Virus record (IMG/VR): IMGVR_UViG_3300020578_000006
Location: 165,718-229,717 of that record
Reading direction: 5' to 3' (one strand)
DNA: 64,000 nt
A program made the translations under genes and the position numbers. The notes under the pieces were generated by a model. That model saw only the letters and a list, made by a program, of their open reading frames with translations, had not been told where the DNA came from and searched no databases. Positions 37,961 through 59,264 of this stretch are shown one piece after another. Each line of letters opens with the position of its first letter. Position 1 is the first letter of the stretch.

Positions 37961-38222
37961 TATCTTCTCCTGCTGCTGTCTGTATATCTAATTTGTTACT
38001 GTAAACCTTTTCTAAGACGGCTATAGACATAATACCTATAATTATAAACGCTGCAATAATTGAAACAGCTTTGCAAATTGTTCTTCTGACATTTTGCCTC
38101 TTATGGTATGCTTTATAAGAAGAAAGAAAATTATTAAAATAGTCAGAGGAAGGCGAATTAAGATCAGAAGCCCTCTTAATAAGTCTCGAAAGCTCATTCA
38201 TTGGGGCCCTCTTGTTGCACAA
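37947..38222 (-). CDS. Single-TM membrane protein
   Basis: Hydrophobic AVSIIAAFIIIGIMSIAVL segment. Confidence 0.5.
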   Translation of the reverse strand: MCNKRAPMNELSRLIKRASDLNSPSSDYFNNFLSSYKAYHKRQNVRRTICKAVSIIAAFIIIGIMSIAVLEKVYSNKLDIQTAAGEDSESK

Positions 38223-41200
38223 CTAAAATTAATAGTCGCAGTATTTTTAACTGCTGCAGCGTTTAATGAGGCTACATCTGACTCCATAGAATCTTCTACC
38301 ATAATTATTTTTATTGCAGCAGTTCCAAATGCTGGTATGTTCTTATACATAAATCTCCATTCTTTTTCATATCTAGAATTTACATCTACTTTAGGAACTT
38401 GTGCCCATGCTAAATTACCTTTAGACCCATCAGGGTTAACAAGAACACCATTTCCATTGTCCTCTCCGGTTGCCGCATCATCGTTAAGAGCGTTAGCATC
38501 TCTTATATTATAGAATACTTCCTTTACAGTGCTATCTGTTTTTATAACAAATTCGTAGTTTTGACTAGTTAATGTTTCTCCCGGTCTAGGATAAAGAATT
38601 TGACCTGAAGGGGGTTTAGAATCATAATAAAAAACTTGAGTAAAAGTATTATAGTAAGGTGTAAAGCCTGGCGCCTTAAGGAATGCTCGAGCTCTTAATA
38701 CATGATAGCCTTCTTCCAAGCCCACTCTTTTACTTGCAAAATCATTATGTACATAGTTTTCAACTGTTGTTGCATTAAAATTAGTTACAGAAAATTGTGA
38801 TGCCATTTTGCTTTTTATACTGACCATATTACCGTTAGAAGGAAAAACACTTAATGTATCTAAATAAGTGCCGCCAATTTTATAACGCAATTGACCCGTT
38901 GGCCAAGGTATTTGTACAGACCACCAATACGTAGGTCTTCCATTACCATCATTCGGACCAGTTCCGTCTCTTATAGCTTCTAGTACTCTTGTTGAAGCTA
39001 TTGCAGCTACGCCTCCATAGCCCTCAGGAAAAGAAATACCATCAGTTGTGTAATATACAAAAAGTTTAGCATTATTATAATACTCACCAGTTTTGATTCT
39101 AATAGTGGCACTTGAAGCATTAGCTACAAACTGACGTCTACCATCTGCAATTACGTTTGGATCATGATAGATGTAATCGGAAGGTGTAAAGAATGCGTTA
39201 GGACCATTTCCTAAATTAAAATTAACTCTTCTAAGCCCCTTTATAGCTATATAGGTTTCAGCTCCTTGCGAACCTACTATATTACGATTAACGTTAGCTG
39301 CAGCAAACTTATCTCTTACTCGGTAATCAAATTTCATTTGTTCATAACCTAAAAACATATCATCAGTGCCTGGGGGATAGTCCCTCTTGATGTCCGTCAT
39401 CGAACCCAGGCCCATTTGAGAGTTAACGTCAACCCCTCCATCTAGTTTTAATAATACATTTTCCGCTGAGCCATCGAGTTGTACAATAAAGCTTAAATTT
39501 TGACCAGATCTTACAATAGGAATAAATGTTTCATATGTATAATCAGAAGTGTTTGTATCATATAAGCCATAAGGGTTAAACGCTGCATCTCCATTCGTTC
39601 CATCTTTTCTTTTAACTTTTATGTAAGGAACATTAGTACCGTTTTCTCTTATGTTTATAGCATTTAAACCTGTGTTTAAAGTAGGTCTTTCAGGAGTACG
39701 ATAAGAGAACATATAATAACTACTAGGCGGGACTATGACATTTCTTAATTCGTTTGCATACTTATAAAACCCTACTTGACCAGATCCGTTGGGCCCGGTA
39801 GCATATTGAAACAGATAAGCATCAGAAGGAAATGAAGAAGTAATAGGTGCAGACTTTCCATTCCATCTATTTCCGTTTATCATTGCGATCATAGTAACTC
39901 CGGTTGCATCAGAAGATGCACCATATCTTCTATCTATTCTTTCATAAGCAACATAATCGTTATTGGACCATATTCCCTTTTGACTGCCTCTTGCAAAATT
40001 ATTATGTATTTTAACTAAATTAGGAATCCTAGGGTCACTCCATTGTCCAAGAAAAGCTGAATTTGCTATACGGGGAAATTCACCTCCTGAATTTGTTAGT
40101 ACCCCTGCATGGTAATTGCCATCTGTATATATAAGAGGAAGGCCTGCTCTAGTAAAATAGAATGCGTGTTGAATATGGCGGTCGGTAGACCAACCATTAT
40201 CGTGAGATTGTGAATGCATAACAGCTACATCTGAACCAAAGCCTCCTGAGCCTTGACCATCAAAGCCAGATAAATTATTCCCTATTCTGTTATCTAGATT
40301 ACTTTTAAGAATATTATCTACTAGTCTCATTCCTGCATTAATATAATCACCATAAGGAGGTGGTTCACCGAGGTGCTCACCAAACATCATAGCATCATCT
40401 CTACCTAGATCAGTATTAAAAACACTATCTCGGTGATTGATATCTGCAAAGCCTCTAGATATATTAAACTGTCTTTGTGCTTGACCTACATAACCATAAT
40501 CAGAAAAATCTTTATCAGTTCCATAAGAAGCACCAAAGAAATCATATGGCACGTGCTTTACAGCGTCTAATCTTAATCCATCACATTTAGTTCTATCCAT
40601 AAACCAACGTACCGCTCTATTAAGATATTCTTCTACGTACTCTGAATAATATGCTTCATTAGCAGCAAGATACTCAACTGTTAATCCATTCTCATAACCA
40701 AACCCTACATAATTACCGTTTGCGTCATAACAATAAAATTCTGGGTTATTAGGATGTCTTAAGAACTTTACCTTTTGTGTCCACCATCCCTCGTTTGGTC
40801 CATGATTCTTATTCCAGATACCCGTCTCTGTAGCAATATCTATTAAATCAGATAATCCTCTGTTTTGTACTTCCCATACATTACCCCAATCACTTGTGTT
40901 ATACCATTTGCGGTAAGTACCATCAGGCATTAACTTAAGATGAAAGTCTTCAGGTCTCATTCCTGGATACAAATCAAGAGGTGTATCAGCTGTATACCCA
41001 GGTGTATCAAACCCGCGGTGATTCATTATATTATCAAAATAAACTCTGATACCAAAACGGTGTGCGGTTTCAATTAACATCATGAGTTCAGCTTCAGTAC
41101 CATACCTTGTATAAGTAGAACCTCTTTGGTCTTTAGAACCTAAATCAAATGGATCAAATAAATCATATCCTACTGAAAATGAACTACCAGCTTTTGCAGG

Positions 41201-41356
41201 GGGAGGAAGCCATAGAGAATCATAACCTACTTCTGCAAGTTCAGGAAGCTTGGCAGTAATTTCTGCCCAACTAGTATTAAAATACTGAAGCATAGCCTCA
41301 GCTTGAACGTTAACTGAAATGAAAAGAGAAGCGAAAAATGCAATTGCCCTTTTCAT
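38198..41356 (-). CDS. Secreted multidomain GH13 alpha-amylase-family enzyme
   Basis: Signal peptide; LWLPP, GYDLFD, DNIMNH, GLRLDAVKH (nucleophile), FGEH (acid/base), SHDN. Confidence 0.9.
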   Translation of the reverse strand: MKRAIAFFASLFISVNVQAEAMLQYFNTSWAEITAKLPELAEVGYDSLWLPPPAKAGSSFSVGYDLFDPFDLGSKDQRGSTYTRYGTEAELMMLIETAHRFGIRVYFDNIMNHRGFDTPGYTADTPLDLYPGMRPEDFHLKLMPDGTYRKWYNTSDWGNVWEVQNRGLSDLIDIATETGIWNKNHGPNEGWWTQKVKFLRHPNNPEFYCYDANGNYVGFGYENGLTVEYLAANEAYYSEYVEEYLNRAVRWFMDRTKCDGLRLDAVKHVPYDFFGASYGTDKDFSDYGYVGQAQRQFNISRGFADINHRDSVFNTDLGRDDAMMFGEHLGEPPPYGDYINAGMRLVDNILKSNLDNRIGNNLSGFDGQGSGGFGSDVAVMHSQSHDNGWSTDRHIQHAFYFTRAGLPLIYTDGNYHAGVLTNSGGEFPRIANSAFLGQWSDPRIPNLVKIHNNFARGSQKGIWSNNDYVAYERIDRRYGASSDATGVTMIAMINGNRWNGKSAPITSSFPSDAYLFQYATGPNGSGQVGFYKYANELRNVIVPPSSYYMFSYRTPERPTLNTGLNAINIRENGTNVPYIKVKRKDGTNGDAAFNPYGLYDTNTSDYTYETFIPIVRSGQNLSFIVQLDGSAENVLLKLDGGVDVNSQMGLGSMTDIKRDYPPGTDDMFLGYEQMKFDYRVRDKFAAANVNRNIVGSQGAETYIAIKGLRRVNFNLGNGPNAFFTPSDYIYHDPNVIADGRRQFVANASSATIRIKTGEYYNNAKLFVYYTTDGISFPEGYGGVAAIASTRVLEAIRDGTGPNDGNGRPTYWWSVQIPWPTGQLRYKIGGTYLDTLSVFPSNGNMVSIKSKMASQFSVTNFNATTVENYVHNDFASKRVGLEEGYHVLRARAFLKAPGFTPYYNTFTQVFYYDSKPPSGQILYPRPGETLTSQNYEFVIKTDSTVKEVFYNIRDANALNDDAATGEDNGNGVLVNPDGSKGNLAWAQVPKVDVNSRYEKEWRFMYKNIPAFGTAAIKIIMVEDSMESDVASLNAAAVKNTATINFSCATRGPQ

Positions 41357-41927: not shown

Positions 41928-42581
41928 TTACTTTCTCTTTTTAAGAAGTAGTAGTGCGCTAACACCTAACAATGATAGGATTGAAGGTTCGGGTACAGCA
42001 GTAAATTGTGTTAAGTAATTTACTCCCCCGTTGCTTGCATAGTTTTCAAAACTACCACTGCTTCCACCGTTAGACCATGTAAAGTCAGCCTTTGCATACA
42101 TTTCTATTGTGTATGTTTTAGGTGCTTGAATGGTACCAGCGGTTACGTTCTGTAATAAGTTAACAGAAGAATTGGCTGCCCAATATTTGTTAACGTTACC
42201 ATCAGTCCATGAGTTACTAAACGGAACGTTATATGAACTGAATGCACCTTTATCAGCTGCACCAGTTTCATACACCCTCCAGTATAAAGTAACTGCATTA
42301 GCAGAATCTGTAGAACTTTGCCAGGTTTTAGCAGTTGCACTAGCTAATTGTAGTAACCCACCTTGATTCATGTTAATAGTACCAAGGCTAGCAGGTAAAG
42401 AATTAGCAGGGTTTGGACCATGGGTATCACCAAGCAAATTATAGAACGTAGTTGCTTGATTAATCACATCCAAACTAGAAGCATCTACACTAAACCCAAC
42501 ACCTACTGCATACATAGTATTGGCATAAGATGCTGATGCTAACCCTAAACTTATTACAATAGCTAGAATTAATTTATTCAT
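41928..42581 (-). CDS. PEP-CTERM sorting-domain protein
   Basis: Signal peptide plus VPEPS-ILSLLGVSALLLL-KKRK. Confidence 0.9.
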   Translation of the reverse strand: MNKLILAIVISLGLASASYANTMYAVGVGFSVDASSLDVINQATTFYNLLGDTHGPNPANSLPASLGTINMNQGGLLQLASATAKTWQSSTDSANAVTLYWRVYETGAADKGAFSSYNVPFSNSWTDGNVNKYWAANSSVNLLQNVTAGTIQAPKTYTIEMYAKADFTWSNGGSSGSFENYASNGGVNYLTQFTAVPEPSILSLLGVSALLLLKKRK

Positions 42582-44146
42582 ACATTACCCTCCTTTCTTT
42601 TGAGCGTTCTTATTGCAAGTACCCCTAGTCCTCCAAGCAGCATTAAGCTACCAGCAGAGGGTTCAGGAATACCTGAAACTTCAATGTTATTAACAAACAG
42701 ACCATAGTTTGGTTGATCTGCTGTAGTGGTCTGTATGTCACCTGCATAGAAGTGAATAGTAGTAATATAATCCGGCACATTTACATTAGTCACAAATAAC
42801 ACCTCTGGATTTCCGTATAAATAAGCACTTACTTCAACAAGTGTAGGGGTTAATTGCTCTACCATGTAAGTTAATGCTTGTTGATAGCCATTGGCTAACA
42901 CCTGAGTATTAGTTAATCCAGTACCTGCAAAGGTAATAGGATCTGACCATACATTCTGGAATCTAAACACTGCAGTGTTTCCAGACATGAATTCAACACC
43001 TCGGTTACCTCCATTCCAAAGATAGTTTGCATCTACTGATAGAGTTTGACCTGCTATAAGGCCACCACCATTGAGTACAAACCAACCGTTTGAGTATTGA
43101 TTATAAGCCGTATTACCAGGTACAAAATTAAATGCACTTGCTCCAATACTAGTTCTTCCTCCTTGAGAGGAATTACTAATCTGGGTTATAGCAGATGTGT
43201 CATTTTGGAAGTACCAAGTACCTACACTTGTACCAGCACCTTCTATCCATGTTGCAGTGGTATAGCTGCTGGCATCCTCTATACCTAATACAGCTGCATG
43301 TGTTGTATTTAGACTAAAGATAGCGAGCAATGCAGCAAGCAAGCTAACTTTAGTTTTGTTTTTTGTTCTCATAAAACCTAATAATGTTGCGCCTATTACA
43401 AGCAATAACCAAGTATCTGGTTCAGGAATAATACCTACATCAGAGAGCGAATCACCCACAGATAGATAATCAATATGCACAACAGGTGCTGCAGTTGCAG
43501 AACCTTGTCTTAAGTTAATAGCAGATATAAAAGAAGCTGGCTCTGAACCTGTAGTAGATAGCCAATTAACTGTTCCTAGTTCTGCTACAAGTAATGATCT
43601 GTTTGTATCATTAGGGTTTATGTACAAGCTAAATGTATCATTAAGAGTGCCAGCTACAAAATCCCATGCCATAACTATAGTGTATTCAGTGTTAAAATCT
43701 AATAATGTAGTTCCCCAGGTCATTGCAGATCCTGTGCCTGATGCAGATTGTAATCCCAGTTGAAATCCAGCACCTGAGCTTCTAGCAGCCAATCTTTGAT
43801 AAAAATTGGAAGAAGTACCTGCAGGGTCAGATAGGTTTAAGAAGTAATCACCATTAACAAAGGCAGATGCAATTTTAAGATCTACTCTTGTATATAAAGT
43901 ATTACCAGACGTCTTTACTACTTGTGAAGTTAGTGCTTTCCAAACATCTTGACCTGTTGTATTAATAATTGCTTTACCATCTTGGTACTGAATAGGATTA
44001 TTAGAAGCAGTGGATGTTTGAGTCCATCCATTCTGCCCTACTAGATTTCCATTTACATATCCTGTTGAAAAGTCATCAATTAGATATGTTGCTGCATTGA
44101 GATTTATAGCTACCAATGCAAGTAGTGTTGTTATTAGTTTTTTCAT
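42578..44146 (-). CDS. Tandem double PEP-CTERM protein
   Basis: Signal; internal IPEPDTWLLLVIGATLLGFMRTK; second signal; terminal IPEPSAGSLMLLGGLGVLAIRTLKRK. Confidence 0.85.
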   Translation of the reverse strand: MKKLITTLLALVAINLNAATYLIDDFSTGYVNGNLVGQNGWTQTSTASNNPIQYQDGKAIINTTGQDVWKALTSQVVKTSGNTLYTRVDLKIASAFVNGDYFLNLSDPAGTSSNFYQRLAARSSGAGFQLGLQSASGTGSAMTWGTTLLDFNTEYTIVMAWDFVAGTLNDTFSLYINPNDTNRSLLVAELGTVNWLSTTGSEPASFISAINLRQGSATAAPVVHIDYLSVGDSLSDVGIIPEPDTWLLLVIGATLLGFMRTKNKTKVSLLAALLAIFSLNTTHAAVLGIEDASSYTTATWIEGAGTSVGTWYFQNDTSAITQISNSSQGGRTSIGASAFNFVPGNTAYNQYSNGWFVLNGGGLIAGQTLSVDANYLWNGGNRGVEFMSGNTAVFRFQNVWSDPITFAGTGLTNTQVLANGYQQALTYMVEQLTPTLVEVSAYLYGNPEVLFVTNVNVPDYITTIHFYAGDIQTTTADQPNYGLFVNNIEVSGIPEPSAGSLMLLGGLGVLAIRTLKRKEGNV

Positions 44147-44793
44147 AATCTTTTTCTTAATGCTAGTAATCCTAGTAATGTTAAATGTAAGGTTGAAGGT
44201 TCAGGAACTACTTCAATTATTTCATTACCTCCGTTATAAGAAAATGTACCTACCAATGCTGTAGTATTAGAAGAGAAGACAAACGATTCCATATTAGGTG
44301 TGCTATCAAACAGAGGGGCGCGCCATAAAGTATCAGTTAAAATAGCTTTATCGTAAGAACTGTTATAAGGTGCAGCTGTAAAATTAACTAGGTCTGCATC
44401 ATATATAGCTAATGCAAGTTGTGTATTTACCGCAACATCAGTATTATCTATTTTGCTATAATTGATTTGCATCTCAAGAAAATCTACTCCCGTATCAACA
44501 AAACCTGTACCGTTAGGAAGAGGGGAGAAAATACCATTACTATAAGTACCCCATAACGCTGACATGTAACGGGTATTAACTGTATTATTATCTACAAGAA
44601 CAGAAAATAAATCGTCATACAAAACTATAGAAGAAACAGCTTTGGATTCGGACACCATAAACCAACCAATAAAAAAGCCGCACATTGTGCGGCTTAGCAT
44701 CTTTAAAGCGTTATAAGCGCTCTTGTATCCTAGCATGTGAGGTTCTCCCTCATATAATGTACTTATACCTGCTGTTGTATTGTTTGCAAGCAT
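44143..44793 (-). CDS. PEP-CTERM sorting-domain protein
   Basis: VVPEPSTLHLTLLGLLALRKRL; true start may be a later Met. Confidence 0.85.
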   Translation of the reverse strand: MLANNTTAGISTLYEGEPHMLGYKSAYNALKMLSRTMCGFFIGWFMVSESKAVSSIVLYDDLFSVLVDNNTVNTRYMSALWGTYSNGIFSPLPNGTGFVDTGVDFLEMQINYSKIDNTDVAVNTQLALAIYDADLVNFTAAPYNSSYDKAILTDTLWRAPLFDSTPNMESFVFSSNTTALVGTFSYNGGNEIIEVVPEPSTLHLTLLGLLALRKRL

Positions 44794-44882: not shown

Positions 44883-45044
44883 ATGGCAGAGCTTGATGAG
44901 CTCATCGCCTTTACCATAGAAAAATACGTGGCAAAAGGCGGCAAAAAAAAGAGCGTTTTGAAGAAAATAGCAGAGTGTAAGACTATGAAAGGGCTTTTAA
45001 AGCTAAGAAGTAAGTTGGGTATGATTAAGTGGGAGAATAAATAA
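44883..45044 (+). CDS. Small basic late protein (53 aa, not in ORF track)
   Basis: TAAATA-5-ATG; MAELDELIAF...KWENK. Confidence 0.45.
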   Translation: MAELDELIAFTIEKYVAKGGKKKSVLKKIAECKTMKGLLKLRSKLGMIKWENK

Positions 45045-45048
45045 CTAT

Positions 45049-45270
45049 ATGAAGCTATTCGACAAAATACTTGATGTGTATTATGATGTTGTCTTTAAAG
45101 TAGAAGACCTTGCAACAACTGTTAAGTATAAAGTTGTTGATTTGATCGACGGTATTAAGGGCCACAAAAGTAGTCTTGATGCCTATGTAGGTCAAGAAAT
45201 TGATCTAGTTCAGAAAGAACCGGTCAAAAAGACAAAGAAAAAGAAAACGTCTAAAAAGAAAAAGAAGTAA
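45049..45270 (+). CDS. Small late protein with Lys-rich tail
   Basis: AATAAATA-5-ATG. Confidence 0.5.
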   Translation: MKLFDKILDVYYDVVFKVEDLATTVKYKVVDLIDGIKGHKSSLDAYVGQEIDLVQKEPVKKTKKKKTSKKKKK

Positions 45271-45364
45271 TTGATTTAAAATAATTACCGTCTACAATAA
45301 TACTGTGGACATACTGCACCTTTTAAATGATAGAAACGGCTATGGGTGGTGGGGTTTATAAAAT

Positions 45365-46042
45365 ATGGGCAACATATGGAATACACTCATTGATGTGCAG
45401 CATATGCTGCAAAAGCAGTTTGAGATCAGTGGCAAGGAAATACAAGAACCAGGCATGGATCGGTTCAATCAACCGGGGTGGATAAACCGGGTATGGACAT
45501 CTGATAATTATCGCAGAGCTCATATTGATGTAGTTGACACCCGTGACATCAAGGGACTATGGATGATGCATTGCTGCATCTTTCCGCATGTACACAATGA
45601 TGCACCCATATTTGGGTTTGATGTGATTGCCGGTAAGAATATTATTACAGGTTGTTTTCATGATTACAGTGTGACTGTGAACAAGGACCATGACATGTGC
45701 ACTTGGTTTGCTCAATATGTGAAACAATTTTCATGGCGCAAAATCAGAGAATTACCCGCATGGGCCAATCGTATATTTTCTCCAAGCATGGTGGCTGCCA
45801 GCCAAGTCACATGTGAAACAGAATTGCAGCAAATCTCTCAAATGGTAACAGACACTTCTGCATATTATTTGCAACATATAGGAGCATCCAATCACAAGGA
45901 TGTAAACACTACTGCAGCTCAAAATTATTATGCTGCCAATCAGAAGGAAAATCCTCACACTCCCCGGGTTATGGCTAAACTGGGTCTTAAGGAAGATGAC
46001 ATTAAAGTCTTTATTCAAAATTGCTTGTTTCCTGAGATATGA
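45365..46042 (+). CDS. pcyX: Ferredoxin-dependent bilin reductase, PcyX/PcyA type
   Basis: YRRAHID55, WMMH69CCIFP, PIFGFD86, QNYY..NQKENPHT. Confidence 0.85.
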   Translation: MGNIWNTLIDVQHMLQKQFEISGKEIQEPGMDRFNQPGWINRVWTSDNYRRAHIDVVDTRDIKGLWMMHCCIFPHVHNDAPIFGFDVIAGKNIITGCFHDYSVTVNKDHDMCTWFAQYVKQFSWRKIRELPAWANRIFSPSMVAASQVTCETELQQISQMVTDTSAYYLQHIGASNHKDVNTTAAQNYYAANQKENPHTPRVMAKLGLKEDDIKVFIQNCLFPEI

Positions 46043-46088
46043 AAAGAAGATACGTTGATTTTTGTATAAACATAGTTAAATTACGTAT

Positions 46089-46277
46089 ATGGCAACACAA
46101 ACACACGAATCAATTAAAAATTTAGTCGAAACTCTTTCTACAGAAGAAACAAAATTCTGGGAAGGTAATAATGCAGCTGGTACTCGCGCCCGTAAAGCGT
46201 TGCAGGAAATTATTAAGGCTGCACGCGAAGGCCGTAAGGCAATTCAAGAAGAAAAAAATTCCCGTAAGGGTAAATAA
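46089..46277 (+). CDS. Histone H1-like Hc1-family protein
   Basis: KF..GNNAAGTRARKALQE motif. Confidence 0.75.
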   Translation: MATQTHESIKNLVETLSTEETKFWEGNNAAGTRARKALQEIIKAAREGRKAIQEEKNSRKGK

Positions 46278-46646
46278 TTAGCCATTCAGATTCCAAAGAC
46301 GGCGGGTCTCTGGGCTGGAATAATCTCTTCCATGTACTGTTAATGTACGTGAAGCTGTTGCACTCGAAGCCGTAAACGTACTAACTGTATTATCCTCTAG
46401 TACAACGGCAAATGTTGTGCCATGGTAAACATTATCGATGTTAACTCTAGTCCCGTTTACAGCCAAAATGTTTGTTGTATATGCAGCTTGTAAGCCTGTC
46501 CCTGCAACCGGGTCATTAAAAAGTATGCCCTTAGAGCCGGCAGTTAGATTTGTAATACCTACACCTTGTGCTGTAAGAGAATAAGCTAAATTAGAAGGTG
46601 TTGTTAAACCGGGATCTGTAACGTAGTATTTAAACTCGAGTGCCAT
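46278..46646 (-). CDS. Hypothetical late (structural-like) protein
   Basis: TATAAATA-6-ATG; Thr/Ala-rich beta composition. Confidence 0.5.
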   Translation of the reverse strand: MALEFKYYVTDPGLTTPSNLAYSLTAQGVGITNLTAGSKGILFNDPVAGTGLQAAYTTNILAVNGTRVNIDNVYHGTTFAVVLEDNTVSTFTASSATASRTLTVHGRDYSSPETRRLWNLNG

Positions 46647-46676
46647 ATAATATATTTATATGGCTCAGGCAACAAA

Positions 46677-47810
46677 TTATTTAAATCCGATAATTTTTTT
46701 AGGCTGGTCTTTTTCGGCTAAGTCTTCCTTATCATAATTGTAAATCTCTGTAAGAGTTAAAGGTTTATCTACTTTTTTGTCGACACCTAAGAATTTAAAT
46801 ACTTTAGTAGCCTCTTCTTCTGTTAACTCTTTAAACTCGTGTTCGGCAATTAATCTTCCCTTACGTAGTAGTGCTGAGTCAAGCTTTTCTCTTGATGTGT
46901 TTAAGGTAGCAATTATTTGTATATTCAAACAATCTCCTAATACTCCATCGGTCATATTAAGAATATTTGATACCCCATTGTTTGTGTCGTTTGATTCTCT
47001 CGACCCAATCACCTTTTCTGCGTCTTCAATAACCAATATTGAGTTTTTATTTTCCATTAAAAATGGTAAAAAGTTGGGCGCAGTAATACCTTCTGTCATA
47101 TTTGGAGGAACAAAAATGACTTTCTTCTTTAAGAGGGTTGTTAGATATTTAATATAAGTTGTTTTACCGGTGCCTGGCTTTCCGTTTAAAATAACCAACC
47201 CAGTATCACCGAGTGTATTAAGTCTTTTAACTATTGTTTTGTGTTTTTTAATAAATCCCTCACCATAATTTAACTCAAGATCCATTTCTTTACATGGAAG
47301 CTTTGTTGTAAACTCTTTTAATGTGTAGCCTTCCCCCGGGGTCCCAATAATCAAATATATATTATTTGTTGCTATTTCTTCGTGAACAGTAAAATATTTT
47401 AACAAAGAGTCTAGTTTTTCTTTTTTATCAACTAAGGCAATTAGGGTGAGAGAGTGAGCATTAATGTCTTTGGTTGTGGCACTATCATAATCATACTCCA
47501 AATCAATTTCGTTTCCAGCAAGTGTGTCCAGTTTTGCTCTTTCTAGTAAGACTAATACTCCATCACCTTCAAAAGCATATGACGTAGAAACAGTCTCTAC
47601 CTTCTTACCTTTTTTGTAGGGTACAACTACTTCGTAGGCTAGAGTAAAATCTTTTTTAAGTTTTTCTATACAGTCCTCCTTGTATAGTAATCTTACCGGT
47701 CGATATACAAAAGGCTGGCTATTAAATTTATGACAAAAATAATAGCCTAAATTAAAAAGGTTATAGGTGCCTGATGTTTGACTATAAGGCTGAAACATGG
47801 TATCACCCAT
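46677..47810 (-). CDS. AAA+ ATPase
   Basis: GKPGTGKTT, LVIEDAE, LNMTDG, ATLN, ALLRKGRL. Confidence 0.9.
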   Translation of the reverse strand: MGDTMFQPYSQTSGTYNLFNLGYYFCHKFNSQPFVYRPVRLLYKEDCIEKLKKDFTLAYEVVVPYKKGKKVETVSTSYAFEGDGVLVLLERAKLDTLAGNEIDLEYDYDSATTKDINAHSLTLIALVDKKEKLDSLLKYFTVHEEIATNNIYLIIGTPGEGYTLKEFTTKLPCKEMDLELNYGEGFIKKHKTIVKRLNTLGDTGLVILNGKPGTGKTTYIKYLTTLLKKKVIFVPPNMTEGITAPNFLPFLMENKNSILVIEDAEKVIGSRESNDTNNGVSNILNMTDGVLGDCLNIQIIATLNTSREKLDSALLRKGRLIAEHEFKELTEEEATKVFKFLGVDKKVDKPLTLTEIYNYDKEDLAEKDQPKKIIGFK

Positions 47811-52838: not shown

Positions 52839-53066
52839 TTAGATTTTGTAAGGGTAGGTAATCGTATTGAGCTTTTCAACAGTCGAATCAATCACATCAA
52901 TCATCTCATCTTTAGTAAAGATCGGACTGTGAGTTTGATCTTGGTGCAAGTCCACCAACTCAATCATTCGTTTCAGGTTAAGCAAACGGCCAATACAAGT
53001 ACCCACGCTATAAGCGGTGGTCTCTTCATTGGCAGCTGCCACGCTATGTAATGTTGCATTCATCAT
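52839..53066 (-). CDS. Early hypothetical protein
   Basis: Promoter module followed by ATGATG. Confidence 0.55.
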   Translation of the reverse strand: MMNATLHSVAAANEETTAYSVGTCIGRLLNLKRMIELVDLHQDQTHSPIFTKDEMIDVIDSTVEKLNTITYPYKI

Positions 53067-53347
53067 ACTCGTATTATACTGGAAGTTGGGTTAACTGCAA
53101 CTACCAAATGGCCCGCCATATGACATAAGTGACACTGACATATATGGCCAGTGCCACCAAGTTGGCTAACACCATGATGCAGAACTGAATAAGCTTATCC
53201 ATCATGAACCTCCTGTGAAGTATTCATCTTCATATTCTTCCCAGAACTTCTTTAACTCATTCTCTCTCTCTTTGTTATCCAAATACTCTTGTATAACTTG
53301 TTGTTGATCTTCGTTATCCAGACGAGCTATTTTACGAGCAATCCAAC

Positions 53348-53566
53348 TCATATGACTCCCATGCCTTCATACTTGAGCAAAGCATTGTAGAATAACCTCT
53401 GCAAGTCGTTGATAGTATTACACTGATTGATGTGCATGTGCAACCGACGTTTATCTTCGACTCGTATATCAGTCTGATTGATAGCATCCCTAAGCGATCC
53501 CTTAAGCTCGCTTGTTTCTGGTATGTTTAATATGATGTGTTCGAATGCTCGTAGCTTACTAGTCAT
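53348..53566 (-). CDS. Early hypothetical protein
   Basis: ORF in array. Confidence 0.5.
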   Translation of the reverse strand: MTSKLRAFEHIILNIPETSELKGSLRDAINQTDIRVEDKRRLHMHINQCNTINDLQRLFYNALLKYEGMGVI

Positions 53567-53567
53567 G

Positions 53568-53888
53568 TTAGTCTCCTATGTGGTAGCACAATTCTACCTT
53601 AATGTGTTGATCATCAAGCTTTTCCACACCACTCACAGTGGTATAACCACCAAACTTGTTGAAGCGAGCAGGATATAACCTGTTGAGGGCGTTCCACATA
53701 CGGCCCTGATCATATGGCCCATAGAAGGGCACTTTGTAAGCAGAGTGATCATAGTAAGCAGACTGCTGCTCACCACCCAGAGACTCACGCTTGCCCCACT
53801 TGATGCCACCAATGGCAGGCTTGGTCTCAGTACGCCACTCACCAATCATCTGATCGTAAAACTCGTTGGTTACTTCTTTATTCATCAT
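53568..53888 (-). CDS. Early hypothetical protein
   Basis: Promoter module followed by ATGATG. Confidence 0.55.
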   Translation of the reverse strand: MMNKEVTNEFYDQMIGEWRTETKPAIGGIKWGKRESLGGEQQSAYYDHSAYKVPFYGPYDQGRMWNALNRLYPARFNKFGGYTTVSGVEKLDDQHIKVELCYHIGD

Positions 53889-53923
53889 ACCCATAGTATA
53901 TGTGACAGTTGGTTAAACGTCAA

Positions 53924-54127
53924 CTAAAAAGGTCGTTGGTTCAAGTAAGGATGCCACCCATCCAACCGATCTTCAGTCCTCACATCAGCAAAGTCAATGT
54001 ACAATCCCCCATAATACTCATCATCATGTTTGTAGGCCACGTTACAGTCTTTCTGGTAATCGTTTAACTGATTGATACGCTCTGCTAGCTCTCTGTATGT
54101 CATTTGACAGCTCCTTGTGCCAAGCAC
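53924..54127 (-). CDS. Early hypothetical protein
   Basis: MTYRELAERI..L segment; probable later start. Confidence 0.5.
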   Translation of the reverse strand: MLGTRSCQMTYRELAERINQLNDYQKDCNVAYKHDDEYYGGLYIDFADVRTEDRLDGWHPYLNQRPF

Positions 54128-54387
54128 TCTTCAATAGTGGGCTCTTGCCAGTACAAGGTGTTGAAGCCCATGATCCAGACATTCACACCTGGCTTCTTGA
54201 TGCCTCTCATCACCACATCCCCTGCAGGGTGTTGTGCACATGCATCAGTCACAACTTCGATGAATCCTTCTCTGACAGATCCCTGCACATCATATCCCAC
54301 CTTCTTGGCTTCTGTCAAGTAGGGCTTGAGCACTTGGGTGGTCATCAGTTTGGGGAAGAATTTGTGTTTCTGTTGTGTATTCATCAT
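54100..54387 (-). CDS. Early hypothetical protein
   Basis: Promoter module followed by ATGATG. Confidence 0.55.
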   Translation of the reverse strand: MMNTQQKHKFFPKLMTTQVLKPYLTEAKKVGYDVQGSVREGFIEVVTDACAQHPAGDVVMRGIKKPGVNVWIMGFNTLYWQEPTIEECLAQGAVK

Positions 54388-54428
54388 GTCTATATTATGG
54401 CTGAACTGGGGTTTGAGTCAACTACAAT

Positions 54429-54689
54429 TTACTCCGCCCTCACCCACCTAATACCCTTAACTTCATCATCATATCGGGTTTGCACCTCATCCATCATGTT
54501 CTCGGTTTTCACCAACACCACCAACCGCTCCAACTTTGCATCAATATCTTCAATCGTTTTCTTAATAAACTTCCATTTACGGGAATCGATTTTAGCTTCA
54601 TTGCTCACATATTTGAGACCATTCTCCAAGTTCTCAATCATGTAATGGAGATACATACTACGATTATCGCGCTCGGTTTCATTTATCAT
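54429..54689 (-). CDS. Early hypothetical protein
   Basis: Promoter module. Confidence 0.55.
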   Translation of the reverse strand: MINETERDNRSMYLHYMIENLENGLKYVSNEAKIDSRKWKFIKKTIEDIDAKLERLVVLVKTENMMDEVQTRYDDEVKGIRWVRAE

Positions 54690-54724
54690 ACCCATATTAT
54701 GAATGAAATTGAGTTTAGTTCAAC

Positions 54725-55033
54725 TCAAAAATCATCACTATCAACATCATTATTCAACAAATCGTTGATCTTGATAGACTTGATATCGAAGGGTTTAGCG
54801 TTTTTCAGGGCTTCTTTCATTTCCTTTAACCCCTTCTCACTCAATATAACGGTAGAGCTAAAATCTCCCTCTCCATCATTATACAATGTAACTCCTTGAC
54901 TATCAGTATTATAGGAATTGTAATAACCAATCTCCTCTAATACCTTTTCCTCGGTCAAGGAATCCAGCCAGGCCTCTCCACCACACTCCACATCAATCTT
55001 CAACACCGCATATTTTTGTTCTTTTTTCATCAT
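54725..55033 (-). CDS. Early hypothetical protein
   Basis: Promoter module followed by ATGATG. Confidence 0.55.
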   Translation of the reverse strand: MMKKEQKYAVLKIDVECGGEAWLDSLTEEKVLEEIGYYNSYNTDSQGVTLYNDGEGDFSSTVILSEKGLKEMKEALKNAKPFDIKSIKINDLLNNDVDSDDF

Positions 55034-55052
55034 ACTCCTATTATACGGGAAT

Positions 55053-55373
55053 TTACTTTTTCTTCAACTCCAAATTTCTATACTCTTTACTCATTCCCCA
55101 CACATTACCATCTCCATACCAACTCGCACTATCCACCAACTCCCATCCACTATCAATCTTATTAACTTCTTTCAATATATTCCTCCACACCTTCTCAAAC
55201 TTATAACTCCCAAAACTCTTCCACACAATCTTATATCCATTACACAACTCATTATTATATCTATTACAATTATACCGCACCATCTCCTTACCCCTATTAT
55301 CACTAATCTTATTAACCTCTTCAATAAACAACTCTCTAACTTTTTTATTAAACTCTCTATTACTAATTTTCAT
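55053..55373 (-). CDS. Early hypothetical protein, almost C-free coding strand
   Basis: Promoter module; only 2 G on plus strand in 321 nt. Confidence 0.6.
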   Translation of the reverse strand: MKISNREFNKKVRELFIEEVNKISDNRGKEMVRYNCNRYNNELCNGYKIVWKSFGSYKFEKVWRNILKEVNKIDSGWELVDSASWYGDGNVWGMSKEYRNLELKKK

Positions 55374-55408
55374 TTTATTATTATACGGGAAATTTGGATT
55401 TGGTCAAG

Positions 55409-55609
55409 TTAGATTTGGATTGATCCATCCTTTTCAATTTTGTAACAATTACCTGCATCTTCTAGAACTCTTGTATACACCTCTCCTTCAAATATTGAGC
55501 AGATAATTTCTTGACCATCCACTCCTTCAATTATATTACCAACTACTAGTTCGTCTTGTTCTATTTTATTCATACAAATCCACCCAATATATCCATTTAA
55601 CAATTTCAA
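55409..55609 (-). CDS. Early hypothetical protein
   Basis: ORF in array; start uncertain. Confidence 0.4.
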   Translation of the reverse strand: MKLLNGYIGWICMNKIEQDELVVGNIIEGVDGQEIICSIFEGEVYTRVLEDAGNCYKIEKDGSIQI

Positions 55610-55645
55610 TTACTTTATTTAACATACAACTATTCTATTTGAAAT

Positions 55646-55834
55646 TTACTTCTTCTTCAATACAATTACATCATTCTCACAAATACAAATTGTAGGACCA
55701 TTTTTAATTTCTACATTATACAAACTACCATCAAAAACAGCATTAAAAATTGTATCTTTTTTATACAATTCTGTTTTGATATATCCTTTATAGTAACAAT
55801 CCAATTTTGTATCTTTCTTTAATTTAATTAACAT
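55646..55834 (-). CDS. Early hypothetical protein
   Basis: Promoter module. Confidence 0.5.
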   Translation of the reverse strand: MLIKLKKDTKLDCYYKGYIKTELYKKDTIFNAVFDGSLYNVEIKNGPTICICENDVIVLKKK

Positions 55835-55891
55835 ACAACTATTATATCTGAATTTGCATTTTGTTCAATTCAAAAACAATCTATTTTGTTA

Positions 55892-55952
55892 TTGACAGAA
55901 TCTGCATTTCACATATACTATATGTACCACCTTGAATTACGGCAGGAGGGGG
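55892..55952 (+). promoter_or_regulatory. Antisense-oriented promoter element, copy 1
   Basis: TTGACA-16-TATACT then ATATGTACCACCTT..ATTACGGCAGGAGGGGG. Confidence 0.7.
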
Positions 55953-56039
55953 GAGAACTGTACTGCATGTTTTTCTATAAAAACAAGCACTATACATTAC
56001 TTTACTGCTTGTTATTCTGATAATTATTCAAATATACTC

Positions 56040-56276
56040 TTATAATATCCCACTATCAAAAAGGTATTGTCCTCTATTATAATAGGTAGTTAAGTACTCA
56101 CTTCCACTTTTCAGATAGATTTTAGTAGTGATGGAATCATCATCTGTACACCATCCATAATTCATATGGAAGTTCTTGTCCAGAAAGATGCCCTTACCAT
56201 ACACCTTTTTAAGATGTGATGAATGTTTGTCAGCCAATTTGGAGTAGTTCAATTTTATTTGTTCTCCTTCAACCAA
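56040..56276 (-). CDS. Early hypothetical protein
   Basis: ORF in array. Confidence 0.45.
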   Translation of the reverse strand: MVEGEQIKLNYSKLADKHSSHLKKVYGKGIFLDKNFHMNYGWCTDDDSITTKIYLKSGSEYLTTYYNRGQYLFDSGIL

Positions 56277-56548
56277 CTAACTTTATCCAACTTCTTGTTA
56301 GTAAAGTCAATCAACATACTCTCTTCACCCTTATAGATGGTGTGAGTGGGAGTTCTCTGAATGCTATCAAAATTGTCTTTCCAATTGTAGTATTCTCTCT
56401 CTCCATTTGTATATTCATAATAATAACCCTTACTATCTTTACCATCATATTCATCTCCAACTGTAAAGAGAAGAAATTCCTTCTCACTAATCCATTTGGA
56501 TTTTCCATTATACAAGTCAATTGTTAGATACTGTTTGTTTTTCATCAT
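56255..56548 (-). CDS. Early hypothetical protein
   Basis: Promoter module followed by ATGATG. Confidence 0.55.
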   Translation of the reverse strand: MMKNKQYLTIDLYNGKSKWISEKEFLLFTVGDEYDGKDSKGYYYEYTNGEREYYNWKDNFDSIQRTPTHTIYKGEESMLIDFTNKKLDKVSWLKENK

Positions 56549-56579
56549 ACAACTATAATAGCTGAATTTGGATATTGAG

Positions 56580-56810
56580 TCAACTCAAATAAGAGATGTT
56601 TCTAGATTTGATATCATCTAGAATGTCTTGTTTAAAAACTTCTAGAGAAGAATCAATAAGCTCTCTTAATGCTTGCTTCCTTCTGGTAATGGGGTAGTCA
56701 TGCAATAGATCCAACTGATCATCTGCCCACCTCTTTACAAGTTCAGTATAGAAGGAGAGTACATCAGTTTGGTTGTATGGTTTGAATTTATTAATCAGGT
56801 GTGGCATCAT
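56580..56810 (-). CDS. Early protein paralogous to the N-terminal domain of 2846..3730
   Basis: Visible alignment; promoter module. Confidence 0.6.
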   Translation of the reverse strand: MMPHLINKFKPYNQTDVLSFYTELVKRWADDQLDLLHDYPITRRKQALRELIDSSLEVFKQDILDDIKSRNISYLS

Positions 56811-56852
56811 ACTCTTATTGTAGGGGAATGTTGGGTTGAAGTCAACTATAAT

Positions 56853-56904
56853 GTATCAGATATATCAGATGTTTGCATGCAGAGTATCAGATATATCAGA
56901 TGTT
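56853..56904. repeat. Two 21-bp direct repeats GTATCAGATATATCAGATGTT, 31-bp period
   Basis: Exact copies at 56853 and 56884. Confidence 0.85.
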
Positions 56905-57055
56905 AGGTATTAAGAATCTTAACAATCTTATTGAGGGTAATTGTGGGTGAGGGGTCATCTTCCTCTTTTTCTACACCATCCAATTGACCAAACTGTAACA
57001 GATCCTCTAACTCCTCAATAATCTTCTTTCTCTTTTTAGGTGTAAGCTTAATCAT
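56903..57055 (-). CDS. Early hypothetical protein (50 aa, not in ORF track)
   Basis: MIKLTPKKRKKIIEELEDLL...KILNT; overlaps previous stop. Confidence 0.45.
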   Translation of the reverse strand: MIKLTPKKRKKIIEELEDLLQFGQLDGVEKEEDDPSPTITLNKIVKILNT

Positions 57056-57251
57056 CTTCTGCCTCTTCAGTTCCAGTCACTTCAATCTCTACATCACCAT
57101 CATCATAAGCCTTTTGAACAGTATCAAAATCGATACTGTCTTCAGCTTTCTTGTTGGCCTCTTCTTCATTTTTTGCAGTTACAGTTTTTCTGATGAAGAG
57201 GGCTACCAACACATCCACATCAAACTTCTTCTTTTTAGTAGTCTTACTCAT
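57048..57251 (-). CDS. Early hypothetical protein
   Basis: TVTAKNEEEA..KA motif. Confidence 0.5.
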   Translation of the reverse strand: MSKTTKKKKFDVDVLVALFIRKTVTAKNEEEANKKAEDSIDFDTVQKAYDDGDVEIEVTGTEEAEDD

Positions 57252-57499
57252 TAGTCATTGCCCTCATTACTGAACATCTTGCCTGTATCAATAAGGTTCT
57301 CTGCAAATCCTGTAATGCCATAAGCAGTCTCTTCTAGATCCCCATTATCTTCACAATTCTCACTATCTAGATACCTTTCTGCCCATTTAATATCTGACTT
57401 CTTGAGGGTCTCTTGAAATTCCTCAATTGCATCAAACACATTTGCCATCAGTTTGTCAAGCTTTTCAGCTCTTTCAGTTGTCATTTTGTTTTTCATCAT
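57251..57499 (-). CDS. Early hypothetical protein
   Basis: Promoter module followed by ATGATG. Confidence 0.55.
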   Translation of the reverse strand: MMKNKMTTERAEKLDKLMANVFDAIEEFQETLKKSDIKWAERYLDSENCEDNGDLEETAYGITGFAENLIDTGKMFSNEGND

Positions 57500-57529
57500 C
57501 CTCCTATTATATTAGAAATTTGGATTTAG

Positions 57530-57781
57530 TCAATTTTTAATTTTAACAAAACTCAAATCATACCCTCTCCCCCATTCCCCATACCACTCTCTAAAATACT
57601 TTTCATCCTTATCAATACTGCTCTTTATCCATCTGTTAGCAATCTTCTTGTTCTGCTTGTCAACCTCTTTTTTAACCTTCTTCATTTCATATCTGCTAAC
57701 AATATCTACAAGCCCACCATCCCAATCAATCTTAAGGTAAAGGGGTCCCTTCTTTCTTTTTGTTTTTGTATTATTCATCAT
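57530..57781 (-). CDS. Early hypothetical protein
   Basis: Promoter module followed by ATGATG. Confidence 0.55.
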   Translation of the reverse strand: MMNNTKTKRKKGPLYLKIDWDGGLVDIVSRYEMKKVKKEVDKQNKKIANRWIKSSIDKDEKYFREWYGEWGRGYDLSFVKIKN

Positions 57782-57807
57782 GCCTATATTATATGGGAAG
57801 TTAGAAT

Positions 57808-57990
57808 TTAGACAATATAAATCTGTTTTTCAACCACATACTTGCTAAACTCTTCTAATATTTGATCCACCCCCCACTCACTAACTCCATAACTCTCTTT
57901 CAAGTTATCATAATATAACTCCAAATCACCACACCCCACCTCTTCAATGAAGCTTTCAATTTGTTCTAAACTATCAAACTCATGTTTCAT
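57808..57990 (-). CDS. Early hypothetical protein (start MKHEF)
   Basis: Start reassigned from the promoter module. Confidence 0.5.
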   Translation of the reverse strand: MKHEFDSLEQIESFIEEVGCGDLELYYDNLKESYGVSEWGVDQILEEFSKYVVEKQIYIV

Positions 57991-57997
57991 TTTTATA

Positions 57998-58243: not shown

Positions 58244-58291
58244 ACCATTATTATATGGGAAGTTAGGGTTGAAACAAGCCAAATTTTATTA

Positions 58292-58353
58292 TTGACAGAA
58301 ATGTAGATTCCCATATACTATATGTACCACCTTAAGATTACGGCAGGAGGGGG
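58292..58353 (+). promoter_or_regulatory. Antisense-oriented promoter element, copy 2
   Basis: TTGACA-16-TATACT then ATATGTACCACCTT...ATTACGGCAGGAGGGGG. Confidence 0.7.
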
Positions 58354-59262: not shown

Positions 59263-59264
59263 GT

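What the first reader, a model, noticed from the sequence alone, without database searches (positions are those of the whole stretch)
45271..46042. PcyX-type bilin reductase in a phage with non-cyanobacterial host signals, behind an 18-aa leader ORF
Seen: FDBR motifs with Asp55, His69 and Asp86, and no heme oxygenase in the window. The promoter TTGATT-16-TACAAT-6-GTG starts an 18-codon ORF (45305..45361) that ends 3 nt before the ATG. Known (recalled): phage PcyX uses Asp55/His69/Asp86 to reduce biliverdin to phycoerythrobilin and usually sits beside hemO. Inference: bilin synthesis of unknown purpose in a non-phototroph, translationally coupled to a leaderless mini-ORF.
Basis: partly seen in the sequence, partly recalled or inferred. 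Interest (0 to 1): 0.6.

Follow-up and report, generated by a model that had tools for sequence, protein, structure and literature searches.

The report
Phage PcyX gene beside a deleted hemO
A large lake-water T4-like phage carries an intact PcyX-type bilin reductase, and the small "leader ORF" in front of it is the stump of a heme oxygenase gene that relatives still have at that spot; this is a tidy case of a known phage pigment cassette losing one half, not a new system.

Summary
The sequence observation is correct. ORF 45365-46042 is a 225-aa ferredoxin-dependent bilin reductase of the PcyX type. It scores 214 bits to PcyX 5OWG and 45 bits to PcyA. Asp55, His69 and Asp86 are present, and the predicted fold matches 5OWG at 1.3 A.

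No heme oxygenase was found in the whole 229.7-kb T4-like phage record. Ferredoxin, AlaS, psbA, phycobiliprotein, GAF, CpeT, IsdG-type and HemS-type families were also not found.

The interpretation needs one correction. In two syntenic relatives, the slot between the 73-aa gene and the Hc1 gene holds hemO. The window's 18-codon ORF keeps the hemO promoter geometry, the hemO start position and the first 8 hemO codons. It is therefore a hemO deletion stump, not a dedicated leader peptide.

The "leaderless" reading is supported. The layout of -35, 16-17 nt, -10, 6 nt and ATG/GTG occurs 52 times in the genome, against 10-22 at other spacings. Forty-one of those sites open real ORFs.

In 76 of 83 related cassettes hemO overlaps the pcyX start, so the stump's stop 3 nt before the ATG preserves that coupling geometry.

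The enzyme would need biliverdin and ferredoxin from the host. The host is unknown, with weak hints towards Verrucomicrobiota. PcyX-like genes in phages of non-phototrophs are already published.

The parts
44883..45044 (+). 53-aa ORF, conserved left flank of the slot
   Evidence: Homologs stand in the same order in G002 (23484-23687) and G005 (L105 3335-3496). No Pfam family.
45049..45270 (+). 73-aa lysine-rich ORF, conserved left flank. Its stop codon abuts the -35 element.
   Evidence: Homologs lie directly upstream of hemO in G002 and G005. No Pfam family.
45271..45276 (+). -35 element TTGATT of the former hemO promoter
   Evidence: TAATTG(A/C)T is conserved, at the same 16-nt spacing, in the window, G002 and G005, while the spacer itself has diverged.
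45293..45298 (+). -10 element TACAAT, 6 nt before the GTG
   Evidence: TA(C/T)AAT is conserved in three phages. It belongs to a genome-wide class of 52 sites with exactly 6 nt to ATG/GTG.
45305..45361 (+). 18-codon ORF: the 5' stump of a deleted hemO (GTG start, TAA stop 3 nt before the pcyX ATG)
   Evidence: Codons 1-8 (V D I L H L L N) align without gaps with HemO of G002 (M D F L H L I N), G005 (V N L I H L I K) and L002 (M F L H L I K) at the syntenic position. No hemO body is left.
45365..46042 (+). pcyX: PcyX-type ferredoxin-dependent bilin reductase, 225 aa, predicted phycoerythrobilin synthase
   Evidence: PF05996 at 54 bits. 5OWG E 2.4e-62 against PcyA 9e-11. D55/H69/D86 conserved. 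AlphaFold pLDDT 92.7; best fold match 5OWG with target-normalised TM-score (TMt) 0.92 and rmsd 1.3 A. dN/dS 0.05 against relatives.
46055..46082 (+). Hc1 promoter of the same leaderless type (-35 at 46055-46060, -10 at 46077-46082, 6 nt to the ATG)
   Evidence: Listed among the gap-6 sites. Conserved in G002 and G005.
46089..46277 (+). Histone H1-like Hc1 gene, conserved right neighbour of the slot
   Evidence: PF07432 E 4.3e-16. Homologs lie directly after hemO in G002 and G005.
46278..47810 (-). 122-aa ORF and AAA ATPase, conserved right flank
   Evidence: Homologs stand in the same order in G002 and G005. AAA family PF00004.

Best explanation
ORF 45365-46042 is an intact member of the phage PcyX family. 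These are ferredoxin-dependent enzymes that take biliverdin IX-alpha through 15,16-dihydrobiliverdin to phycoerythrobilin in a four-electron reduction.

The gene sits in a conserved slot of a 230-kb T4-like lake phage, between a 73-aa gene and an Hc1 gene. Two relatives carry hemO in that slot, and a fourth relative has hemO directly followed by pcyX. The most economical history is an ancestral hemO-pcyX cassette at this slot, from which this phage lost the body of hemO.

What remains is the hemO promoter, the hemO start codon 6 nt after the -10 (a leaderless start, as at some 40 other genes of this phage), and the first 8 (perhaps 13) hemO codons. The frame then runs on to a stop 3 nt before the pcyX ATG.

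Inferred, not shown:
- pcyX is now transcribed from the former hemO promoter.
- Ribosomes that start on the 5'-terminal GTG terminate at the stump's stop and re-initiate at the pcyX ATG, as they would have after full-length hemO.
- The enzyme depends on host heme oxygenase for biliverdin and on host ferredoxin for electrons, because the phage encodes neither.
For: Family membership: 5OWG PcyX scores 213.8 bits against 45 bits for PcyA. The fold matches 5OWG at 1.3 A. Asp at the PcyA-Glu76 position is the PcyX signature (PMC11480375, PMC13446030), and it is present here and in 89 of 89 PcyX-like sequences. The window groups with three relatives in a 100%-supported clade inside the PcyX radiation, with cyanophage PcyA on a very long branch.

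hemO stump:
- G002 and G005 have the order 53aa - 73aa - hemO - Hc1 - (122aa) - (AAA). The window has pcyX in place of hemO.
- A gap-free three-way alignment runs from the 73-aa stop, through -35, -10 and the 6-nt gap, into hemO codons 1-8.
- L002, whose PcyX is 89% identical, has hemO directly followed by pcyX. It shares the last 8 nt before the ATG with the window.

Leaderless class:
- 52 sites at a 6-nt gap against 10-22 at other gaps.
- 79% of them open ORFs of at least 45 codons, against a 17% background.
- At longest-ORF starts there are 26 genes at gap 6 against 0-4 at other gaps.
- GTG is used by five long ORFs of this class and by the intact hemO of G005.

Coupling: in 76 of 83 cassettes hemO overlaps the pcyX start by 4-29 nt. 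SD-like motifs are rare in this genome, at 42 of 269 genes.

The arrangement is real: contigs from independent lake samples bridge the junction with no differences.

Constraint on pcyX: dN/dS is 0.05 against relatives.

No phage source of biliverdin or electrons was found.
Against: - No RNA run holds this sequence, so the transcription start and expression are unmeasured.
- The promoter is only a 9-of-12 consensus match. Such matches are not enriched locally.
- An ORF of this length ending next to the ATG arises in 8.5% of shuffles, so its being kept open may be chance.
- All hemO-less contigs are nearly clonal and give no test of selection on the stump.
- The one variant strain differs from the window by 4 non-synonymous and 1 synonymous change in pcyX. 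That ratio is unlikely if dN/dS were still 0.05, so constraint may have relaxed after hemO loss.
- If the host is a verrucomicrobium, only 8 of 251 sampled genomes of that phylum carry a canonical heme oxygenase. A host supply of biliverdin is therefore not assured.
- The record's two ends do not join into a closed circle, so a small unassembled piece cannot be excluded.
Confidence: 0.72

Rival explanations
1. pcyX is a relic on its way out. Once hemO was deleted the phage could no longer make biliverdin, the reductase lost its substrate, and it is now drifting. The ORF is still intact only because the deletion is recent.
For: - Between the two hemO-less strains there are 4 non-synonymous changes and 1 synonymous change. 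Three of the window's residues are derived relative to the clade.
- No phage HO, ferredoxin or bilin-binding protein was found.
- Canonical HO is rare in the one phylum hinted at as host.
- hemO stands beside pcyX in 83 of 88 loci, which suggests the pair is the functional unit.
Against: - The ORF is intact and identical in at least 25 contigs from several samples.
- All catalytic and nearly invariant residues are kept.
- The four changes lie at positions that vary across the family.
- The promoter and the stop-start geometry are preserved.
- Relatives tolerate hemO and pcyX 4-20 kb apart, so tight linkage is not essential.
Confidence: 0.22
2. One reading: the 18-codon ORF is a dedicated leader peptide that evolved to regulate or drive pcyX translation.
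For: The leaderless promoter geometry is real in this genome. The stop lies 3 nt before the ATG. In the variant strain the stop changes from TAA to TAG and remains a stop.
Against: - Its start, promoter and first 8 codons are those of hemO in relatives.
- No relative has a mini-ORF. They have full-length hemO or unrelated upstream sequence.
- The local RNA fold is unremarkable, z = -0.48.
- ORFs of this kind are common by chance.
Confidence: 0.04
3. hemO is not really missing. It lies in sequence absent from the record, or the junction is an assembly artefact.
For: The record is linear and its ends do not close. The last ORF lacks its N-terminus.
Against: - Contigs of four other runs and five other assemblies carry the same 94-nt junction.
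- The hemO stump marks where hemO was.
- The record is longer than the roughly 212-215 kb implied by CheckV completeness values for four fragmentary relatives.
Confidence: 0.04
4. The phage infects a cyanobacterium, and PcyX feeds phycoerythrobilin to host phycobiliproteins using host HO, as proposed for marine cassettes.
For: The nearest cultured relatives by UvsX include Synechococcus myophages at about 36% identity. PEP-CTERM sorting also exists in cyanobacteria (general knowledge). A cyanobacterial host would supply HO and ferredoxin.
Against: - No psbA in 230 kb. All cultured T4-like cyanophages carry it (general knowledge).
- No phycobiliprotein or lyase genes.
- The nearest Atlas clusters for the PEP-CTERM protein are from Verrucomicrobiota and Planctomycetota. 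It has full-length relatives in 9 of 251 Verrucomicrobiota genomes.
- The best UvsX E-value is to a Methylophilales phage.
- The only cultured phage with PcyX infects SAR11.
Confidence: 0.1

Closest known systems
PcyX_EBK42635 (PDB 5OWG), phycoerythrobilin synthase from marine viral metagenomes
   Same: Best sequence match (E 2.4e-62) and best fold match (TMt 0.92, rmsd 1.3 A). It has Asp at the PcyA-Glu76 position and the His and Asp equivalents. It is phage-borne.
   Different: The window's protein comes from a freshwater T4-like phage. It belongs to a distinct, well-supported sub-clade of four sequences. Its activity is untested. It has no hemO next to it.
hemO-pcyX mini-cassette, for example in Pelagibacter phage Mosig EXVC030M
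   Same: The reductase is of the same family (47% identity) and is carried by a T4-like myophage of a heterotroph. The cassette layout is the evident ancestor of this locus.
   Different: In Mosig, hemO overlaps pcyX. Here hemO is reduced to an 18-codon stump.
vPcyA/X of freshwater phage CB_2 (PMC11480375)
   Same: An FDBR of the AX clade in a large freshwater phage of a non-phototroph. It is part of a broken cassette.
   Different: The CB_2 enzyme lacks Asp55 and makes phycocyanobilin. The window's enzyme has Asp55, and CB_2 retains hemO.
Cyanobacterial and cyanophage PcyA
   Same: Same fold and the same His/Asp pair.
   Different: PcyA has Glu76 instead of Asp and makes phycocyanobilin. It scores only 45 bits, and P-SSM4 PcyA sits on a very long branch in the tree.
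Leaderless mRNAs (lambda cI from PRM; many actinobacterial and mycobacteriophage genes), from general knowledge
   Same: The -10 hexamer lies 6-7 nt before the start codon, so transcription would begin at the start codon. GTG starts are also used.
   Different: Here the layout is inferred from spacing statistics only. No 5' ends were mapped. I know of no such report for a T4-like phage and did not search for one.

Membership tests
PcyX (phage phycoerythrobilin synthase, AX clade of FDBRs) | FDBR domain and fold | tested here: met
   PF05996 at 54.3 bits against a cut-off of 31. The model has pLDDT 92.7 and all top fold hits are FDBRs.
PcyX (phage phycoerythrobilin synthase, AX clade of FDBRs) | Closer to PcyX than to PcyA or other FDBRs | tested here: met
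   5OWG at 213.8 bits against PcyA at no more than 45 bits. NCBIfam PcyA equivalog at 82.7 bits, far below its 206-bit cut-off. The tree places it inside the PcyX-like radiation.
PcyX (phage phycoerythrobilin synthase, AX clade of FDBRs) | Asp in place of PcyA Glu76, with the His88 and Asp105 equivalents kept | tested here: met
   D55, H69 and D86. The rule is stated in PMC11480375 and PMC13446030.
PcyX (phage phycoerythrobilin synthase, AX clade of FDBRs) | Encoded by a phage | tested here: met
   The record is a T4-like myovirus with Gp23, the Gp20 portal, gp32, terminase and sheath. Only 6 PcyX-like hits were found in 185,579 species genomes, all on MAG contigs.
PcyX (phage phycoerythrobilin synthase, AX clade of FDBRs) | Converts biliverdin IX-alpha to phycoerythrobilin via 15,16-dihydrobiliverdin | not testable with these tools
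   This needs a recombinant enzyme assay with HPLC of the products.
hemO-pcyX two-gene cassette | Intact hemO directly upstream of pcyX | tested here: not met
   No hemO anywhere in the record. Only an 18-codon stump remains. 83 of 88 related loci do have hemO there.
Leaderless transcription unit | -10 hexamer about 6-7 nt before the start codon, with a -35 at 16-17 nt | tested here: met
   The geometry is present, conserved in three phages, and strongly over-represented genome-wide at exactly 6 nt.
Leaderless transcription unit | Mapped 5' end at the start codon | not testable with these tools
   No RNA run holds the sequence.
Translational coupling by termination and re-initiation | Upstream ORF stops within a few nt of the downstream start | tested here: met
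   The stop ends 3 nt before the ATG. hemO overlaps the pcyX start in 76 of 83 cassettes.
Translational coupling by termination and re-initiation | Downstream translation depends on upstream translation | not testable with these tools
   This needs reporter constructs.

The most novel reading that the evidence does not exclude
PcyX is kept under selection and expressed without any phage heme oxygenase, in a phage whose host lineage mostly lacks one. The enzyme would then have a role independent of the HO-FDBR pair. For example, it might act on a host-derived bilin or a related tetrapyrrole catabolite, or scavenge host biliverdin for a non-photosynthetic purpose. In this reading the hemO stump is retained specifically as a leaderless ribosome-delivery ORF.
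Probability: 0.12. Interest if true: 0.6.

Novelty: new member of a known kind. Interest (0 to 1): 0.4.

Why it matters
What hemO-pcyX cassettes do in phages of non-phototrophs is an acknowledged open question (PMC11480375). This phage is a natural hemO knockout that keeps pcyX, its promoter and its coupling geometry. It offers a simple comparison with hemO-bearing sister phages from similar waters: is the reductase useful on its own, or only as a partner that removes the HO product? Separately, the sharp genome-wide peak of promoters placed 6 nt before start codons suggests that this T4-like phage, and presumably its host, use leaderless mRNAs widely. That is a useful clue to the host, and I know of no such report for T4-like phages, though I did not search for one.

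Tried and rejected
- RNA evidence: no RNA run holds the stretch, so transcription could not be examined.
- Local RNA structure around the stump and pcyX start: not different from shuffles, z = -0.48.
- Generic promoter scan: not enriched. Only the start-codon-anchored spacing test was informative.
- Chance tests for the mini-ORF show that on its own it is not significant.
- Search for bacterial carriers: the genome-contig scan used PcyX-specific patterns. It found 6 MAG contigs, mostly short and phage-like, so there was no host lead.
- Atlas search with Hc1 returned only viral clusters.
- The PEP-CTERM half-protein had no match in the five MAGs that carry PcyX-like contigs.
- A scan for relatives of G002 HemO in IMG/VR returned only G002 itself.
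- The careful tree search did not finish in time, so the quick IQ-TREE result was used.
- The primary PcyX mechanism paper (doi 10.1111/febs.14341) is not held. Residue roles are cited from PMC11480375 and PMC13446030 instead.
- The large representative-protein search was not run, because word search and family scans already settled the family.
- Not searched: HugZ/HutZ-type heme-degrading enzymes.
- The whole-genome Pfam overview shows only the 25 commonest families per batch, so the absence of other tetrapyrrole genes rests on the targeted searches.

Full report
**What is at the coordinates.**
- TTGATT at 45271-45276, 16 nt, TACAAT at 45293-45298, 6 nt, then GTG at 45305.
- The GTG opens an 18-codon frame that stops at TAA 45359-45361.
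- The ATG at 45365 opens a 225-codon ORF ending at 46042.

The window is the last 64 kb of a 229,717-bp IMG/VR virus record that CheckV rates as complete. Pfam scans of 233 predicted proteins show a T4-like myovirus. It has the Gp23 capsid, Gp20 portal, gp32, T4-type terminase, sheath, baseplate gp25 and clamp loader. It also carries 7-deazaguanine genes, PhoH and several glycosyltransferases. The same sequence occurs in many lake-water metagenomes.

**The enzyme.** The ORF matches Pfam Fe_bilin_red (54 bits). In the PDB it matches PcyX_EBK42635 (5OWG) at E 2.4e-62, while every PcyA scores 1e-10 or worse. The NCBIfam PcyA equivalog scores far below its cut-off.

D55, H69 and D86 align with PcyA E76, H88 and D105. 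An Asp at the first position is the published PcyX signature, linked to phycoerythrobilin rather than phycocyanobilin (PMC11480375; PMC13446030). All 89 PcyX-like sequences I collected have D/H/D, and cyanophage P-SSM4 PcyA has E.

An AlphaFold model (pLDDT 92.7) superposes best on 5OWG, with target-normalised TM-score (TMt) 0.92 and rmsd 1.3 A. In a quick maximum-likelihood tree the window groups with three sequences (L004, L002, L005) at 100% support inside a large radiation of phage PcyX-like proteins. That radiation also contains Pelagibacter phage Mosig, and P-SSM4 PcyA lies on a very long branch.

**How common the family is.** The word search found more than 5,000 relatives and IMG/VR holds at least 256. 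In 185,579 species genomes only six MAG contigs carry one. Among cultured phages only Mosig does. PcyX-like genes in large freshwater phages of non-phototrophs have been reported (bioRxiv 10.1101/2020.02.13.942896; PMC11480375). Their purpose is called enigmatic there.

**hemO is missing, and where it went.** No heme oxygenase is found in the whole record. This holds for the Pfam model, for tblastn, and for an HMM built from 78 phage hemO genes with all filters off. IsdG-type and HemS-type families are absent as well. In contrast, 83 of 88 related loci have a long ORF (hemO) ending at the pcyX start.

Three fragmentary relatives of this phage are syntenic with it at about 60-80% protein identity. 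Two of them, G002 and G005, share this gene order: 53-aa gene, 73-aa gene, hemO, Hc1, then a 122-137-aa gene and an AAA ATPase on the other strand. The window has exactly this order with pcyX where hemO should be.

A gap-free alignment of the three phages runs from the stop of the 73-aa gene, through a conserved -35 and a diverged 16-nt spacer, through a conserved -10 and a 6-nt gap, into the start codon. It continues through the first eight codons:
- window: V D I L H L L N
- G002: M D F L H L I N
- G005: V N L I H L I K
- L002: M F L H L I K

After codon 8 (possibly 13) the similarity ends. The last 8 nt before the pcyX ATG match the hemO-pcyX spacer of L002. L002 is the fourth relative; its PcyX is 89% identical and it has hemO directly upstream.

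The 18-codon ORF is therefore the stump of hemO. The simplest history is an ancestral hemO-pcyX cassette in this slot. This phage lost the hemO body. In G002 and G005 pcyX now lies 20 kb and 4 kb away. A 12-of-13 match to the pcyX start inside the hemO-Hc1 spacer of G002 may be the reciprocal scar, but it is not significant on its own.

The junction is not an assembly artefact. Contigs from four other runs and five other assemblies carry it unchanged.

**The promoter and the leaderless reading.** As a generic sigma-70 match the promoter is unremarkable. Two other lines support it.

First, both hexamers, their spacing and the 6-nt distance to the start are conserved in three phages while the spacer has diverged.

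Second, the pattern TTGNNN, 16-17 nt, TANNNT, 6 nt, ATG/GTG occurs 52 times in the genome, against 10-22 at any other distance from 3 to 25 nt. Forty-one of the 52 open ORFs of at least 45 codons, against 17% for all ATG/GTG. At predicted gene starts the count is 26 at 6 nt and 0-4 elsewhere.

The neighbouring Hc1 gene is one of these sites, and its promoter is also conserved. Five long ORFs of the class, and the intact hemO of G005, start with GTG. With the -10 ending 6 nt before the start codon, transcription would begin at the start codon, giving leaderless mRNAs. This is an inference from spacing, because no RNA data exist. SD-like motifs are scarce, at 42 of 269 genes.

**Coupling.** In 76 of 83 cassettes hemO overlaps the pcyX start by 4-29 nt, the usual layout for coupled translation. 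The stump's stop 3 nt before the ATG keeps that layout. A variant strain changes the stop from TAA to TAG, which is still a stop.

Whether the open frame is maintained by selection cannot be decided. Such ORFs arise in 8.5% of shuffles, and all hemO-less contigs are nearly identical. The RNA fold of the region is ordinary.

**Is pcyX still useful?** Against its three relatives dN/dS is about 0.05, and every conserved residue is kept. Against the one variant hemO-less strain there are four non-synonymous changes (G2S, K17Q, K178Q, A191T) and one synonymous change. If dN/dS were still 0.05, about 13% of changes would be non-synonymous, so four or more of five has a probability of about 0.001 (my calculation). 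However, the sites are variable ones and the numbers are tiny.

The phage encodes no 2Fe-2S or 4Fe-4S ferredoxin, AlaS, phycobiliprotein or BBAG-like globin, GAF domain or CpeT lyase. It does encode an FMN_red protein. Substrate and electrons must therefore come from the host.

**Host.** No psbA was found. The PEP-CTERM protein next door has its nearest Atlas clusters in Verrucomicrobiota and Planctomycetota. Its N-terminal half finds full-length relatives in 9 of 251 Verrucomicrobiota genomes and 0 of 251 Pseudomonadota genomes.

Those verrucomicrobial loci have 58-66% G+C against the phage's 36%, so they are not the host themselves. UvsX is about 36% identical to both cyanomyophages and a Methylophilales phage. 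Only 8 of 251 Verrucomicrobiota genomes have a canonical heme oxygenase. The host is unresolved; a non-cyanobacterial host is likelier than not.

**Caveat on completeness.** The record's ends do not join. The last ORF lacks its N-terminus, and the G002 homolog has 85 more residues. The record is longer than the 212-215 kb implied by the CheckV completeness values of four relatives, so little can be missing. A short gap remains possible.

**Verdict.** This is a genuine PcyX-family gene of a known kind, in a known kind of setting. Two findings are added: the "leader ORF" is a hemO deletion stump, and this phage uses a leaderless-type promoter layout at dozens of genes.

Noticed in passing
whole genome; in the window for example 1537, 10624, 12058, 18368, 46089 (+) and 33053, 37299, 53066-62656 (-): A leaderless-type promoter class: TTGNNN, 16-17 nt, TANNNT, exactly 6 nt, ATG/GTG. 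There are 52 sites against 10-22 at other spacings, and 41 open real ORFs. About 14 small ORFs on the minus strand of 53066-62656 each have their own copy with a conserved spacer (AAATCCAAATTTCCC-like), which looks like an early-gene array.
   Followed up: partly
window 42578-44146 (-) and 44143-44793 (-): Two PEP-CTERM sorting-signal proteins in a phage. The 522-aa ORF contains two PEP-CTERM modules in one frame: an internal motif at aa 240-260 followed by a second signal-peptide-like stretch, and a second motif at the C-terminus. This may be a tandem pair read as one ORF, or a gene with an internal start. The nearest relatives are in Verrucomicrobiota.
   Followed up: partly
window 38198-41356 (-): A 1052-aa protein with an alpha-amylase catalytic domain, at the head of the same-strand gene run that ends in the PEP-CTERM genes.
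   Followed up: no
window 46089-46277 (+): A histone H1-like Hc1 gene, conserved next to hemO in relatives. Its nearest Atlas clusters are all viral.
   Followed up: partly
genome 44893-45492 (-), outside the window (locus L120): An NADPH-dependent FMN reductase family ORF (200 aa) with a leaderless-type promoter. It is the only redox-carrier-like gene found, so it is a conceivable but untested electron source.
   Followed up: no
genome outside the window and window 1-35000: A 7-deazaguanine pathway set (QueC, QueF, GTP cyclohydrolase I, PTPS, radical SAM/SPASM x3), suggesting modified DNA. Also PhoH, UvdE, a subtilase and many glycosyltransferases.
   Followed up: no
window 63666-63998 (-) and genome position 1: The record's ends do not close. 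The terminal ORF lacks its start, and joining end to start gives no start codon. No terminal repeat was found in the first and last 10 kb.
   Followed up: partly
relatives G002 (L085-L088), G003 (L089-L093), G005 (L105, L106), L002: pcyX occupies four different genomic positions in four related phages, while hemO stays in the 73aa-Hc1 slot. pcyX therefore behaves as a mobile moron within this group.
   Followed up: partly
L107 about 2880-2920 (+), a Verrucomicrobiota genome of 66% G+C: A single AT-rich TTGAAA...TATATT element 7 nt before the ATG of a 285-codon ORF. This is an anecdotal hint that leaderless genes occur in that phylum.
   Followed up: no
window 45209-45309: Contig depth spikes about tenfold over the lysine-codon-rich end of the 73-aa gene, and a 3-nt deletion variant at 45250 is common. 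This is a low-complexity stretch shared with other DNA in the samples, not a copy-number signal.
   Followed up: no
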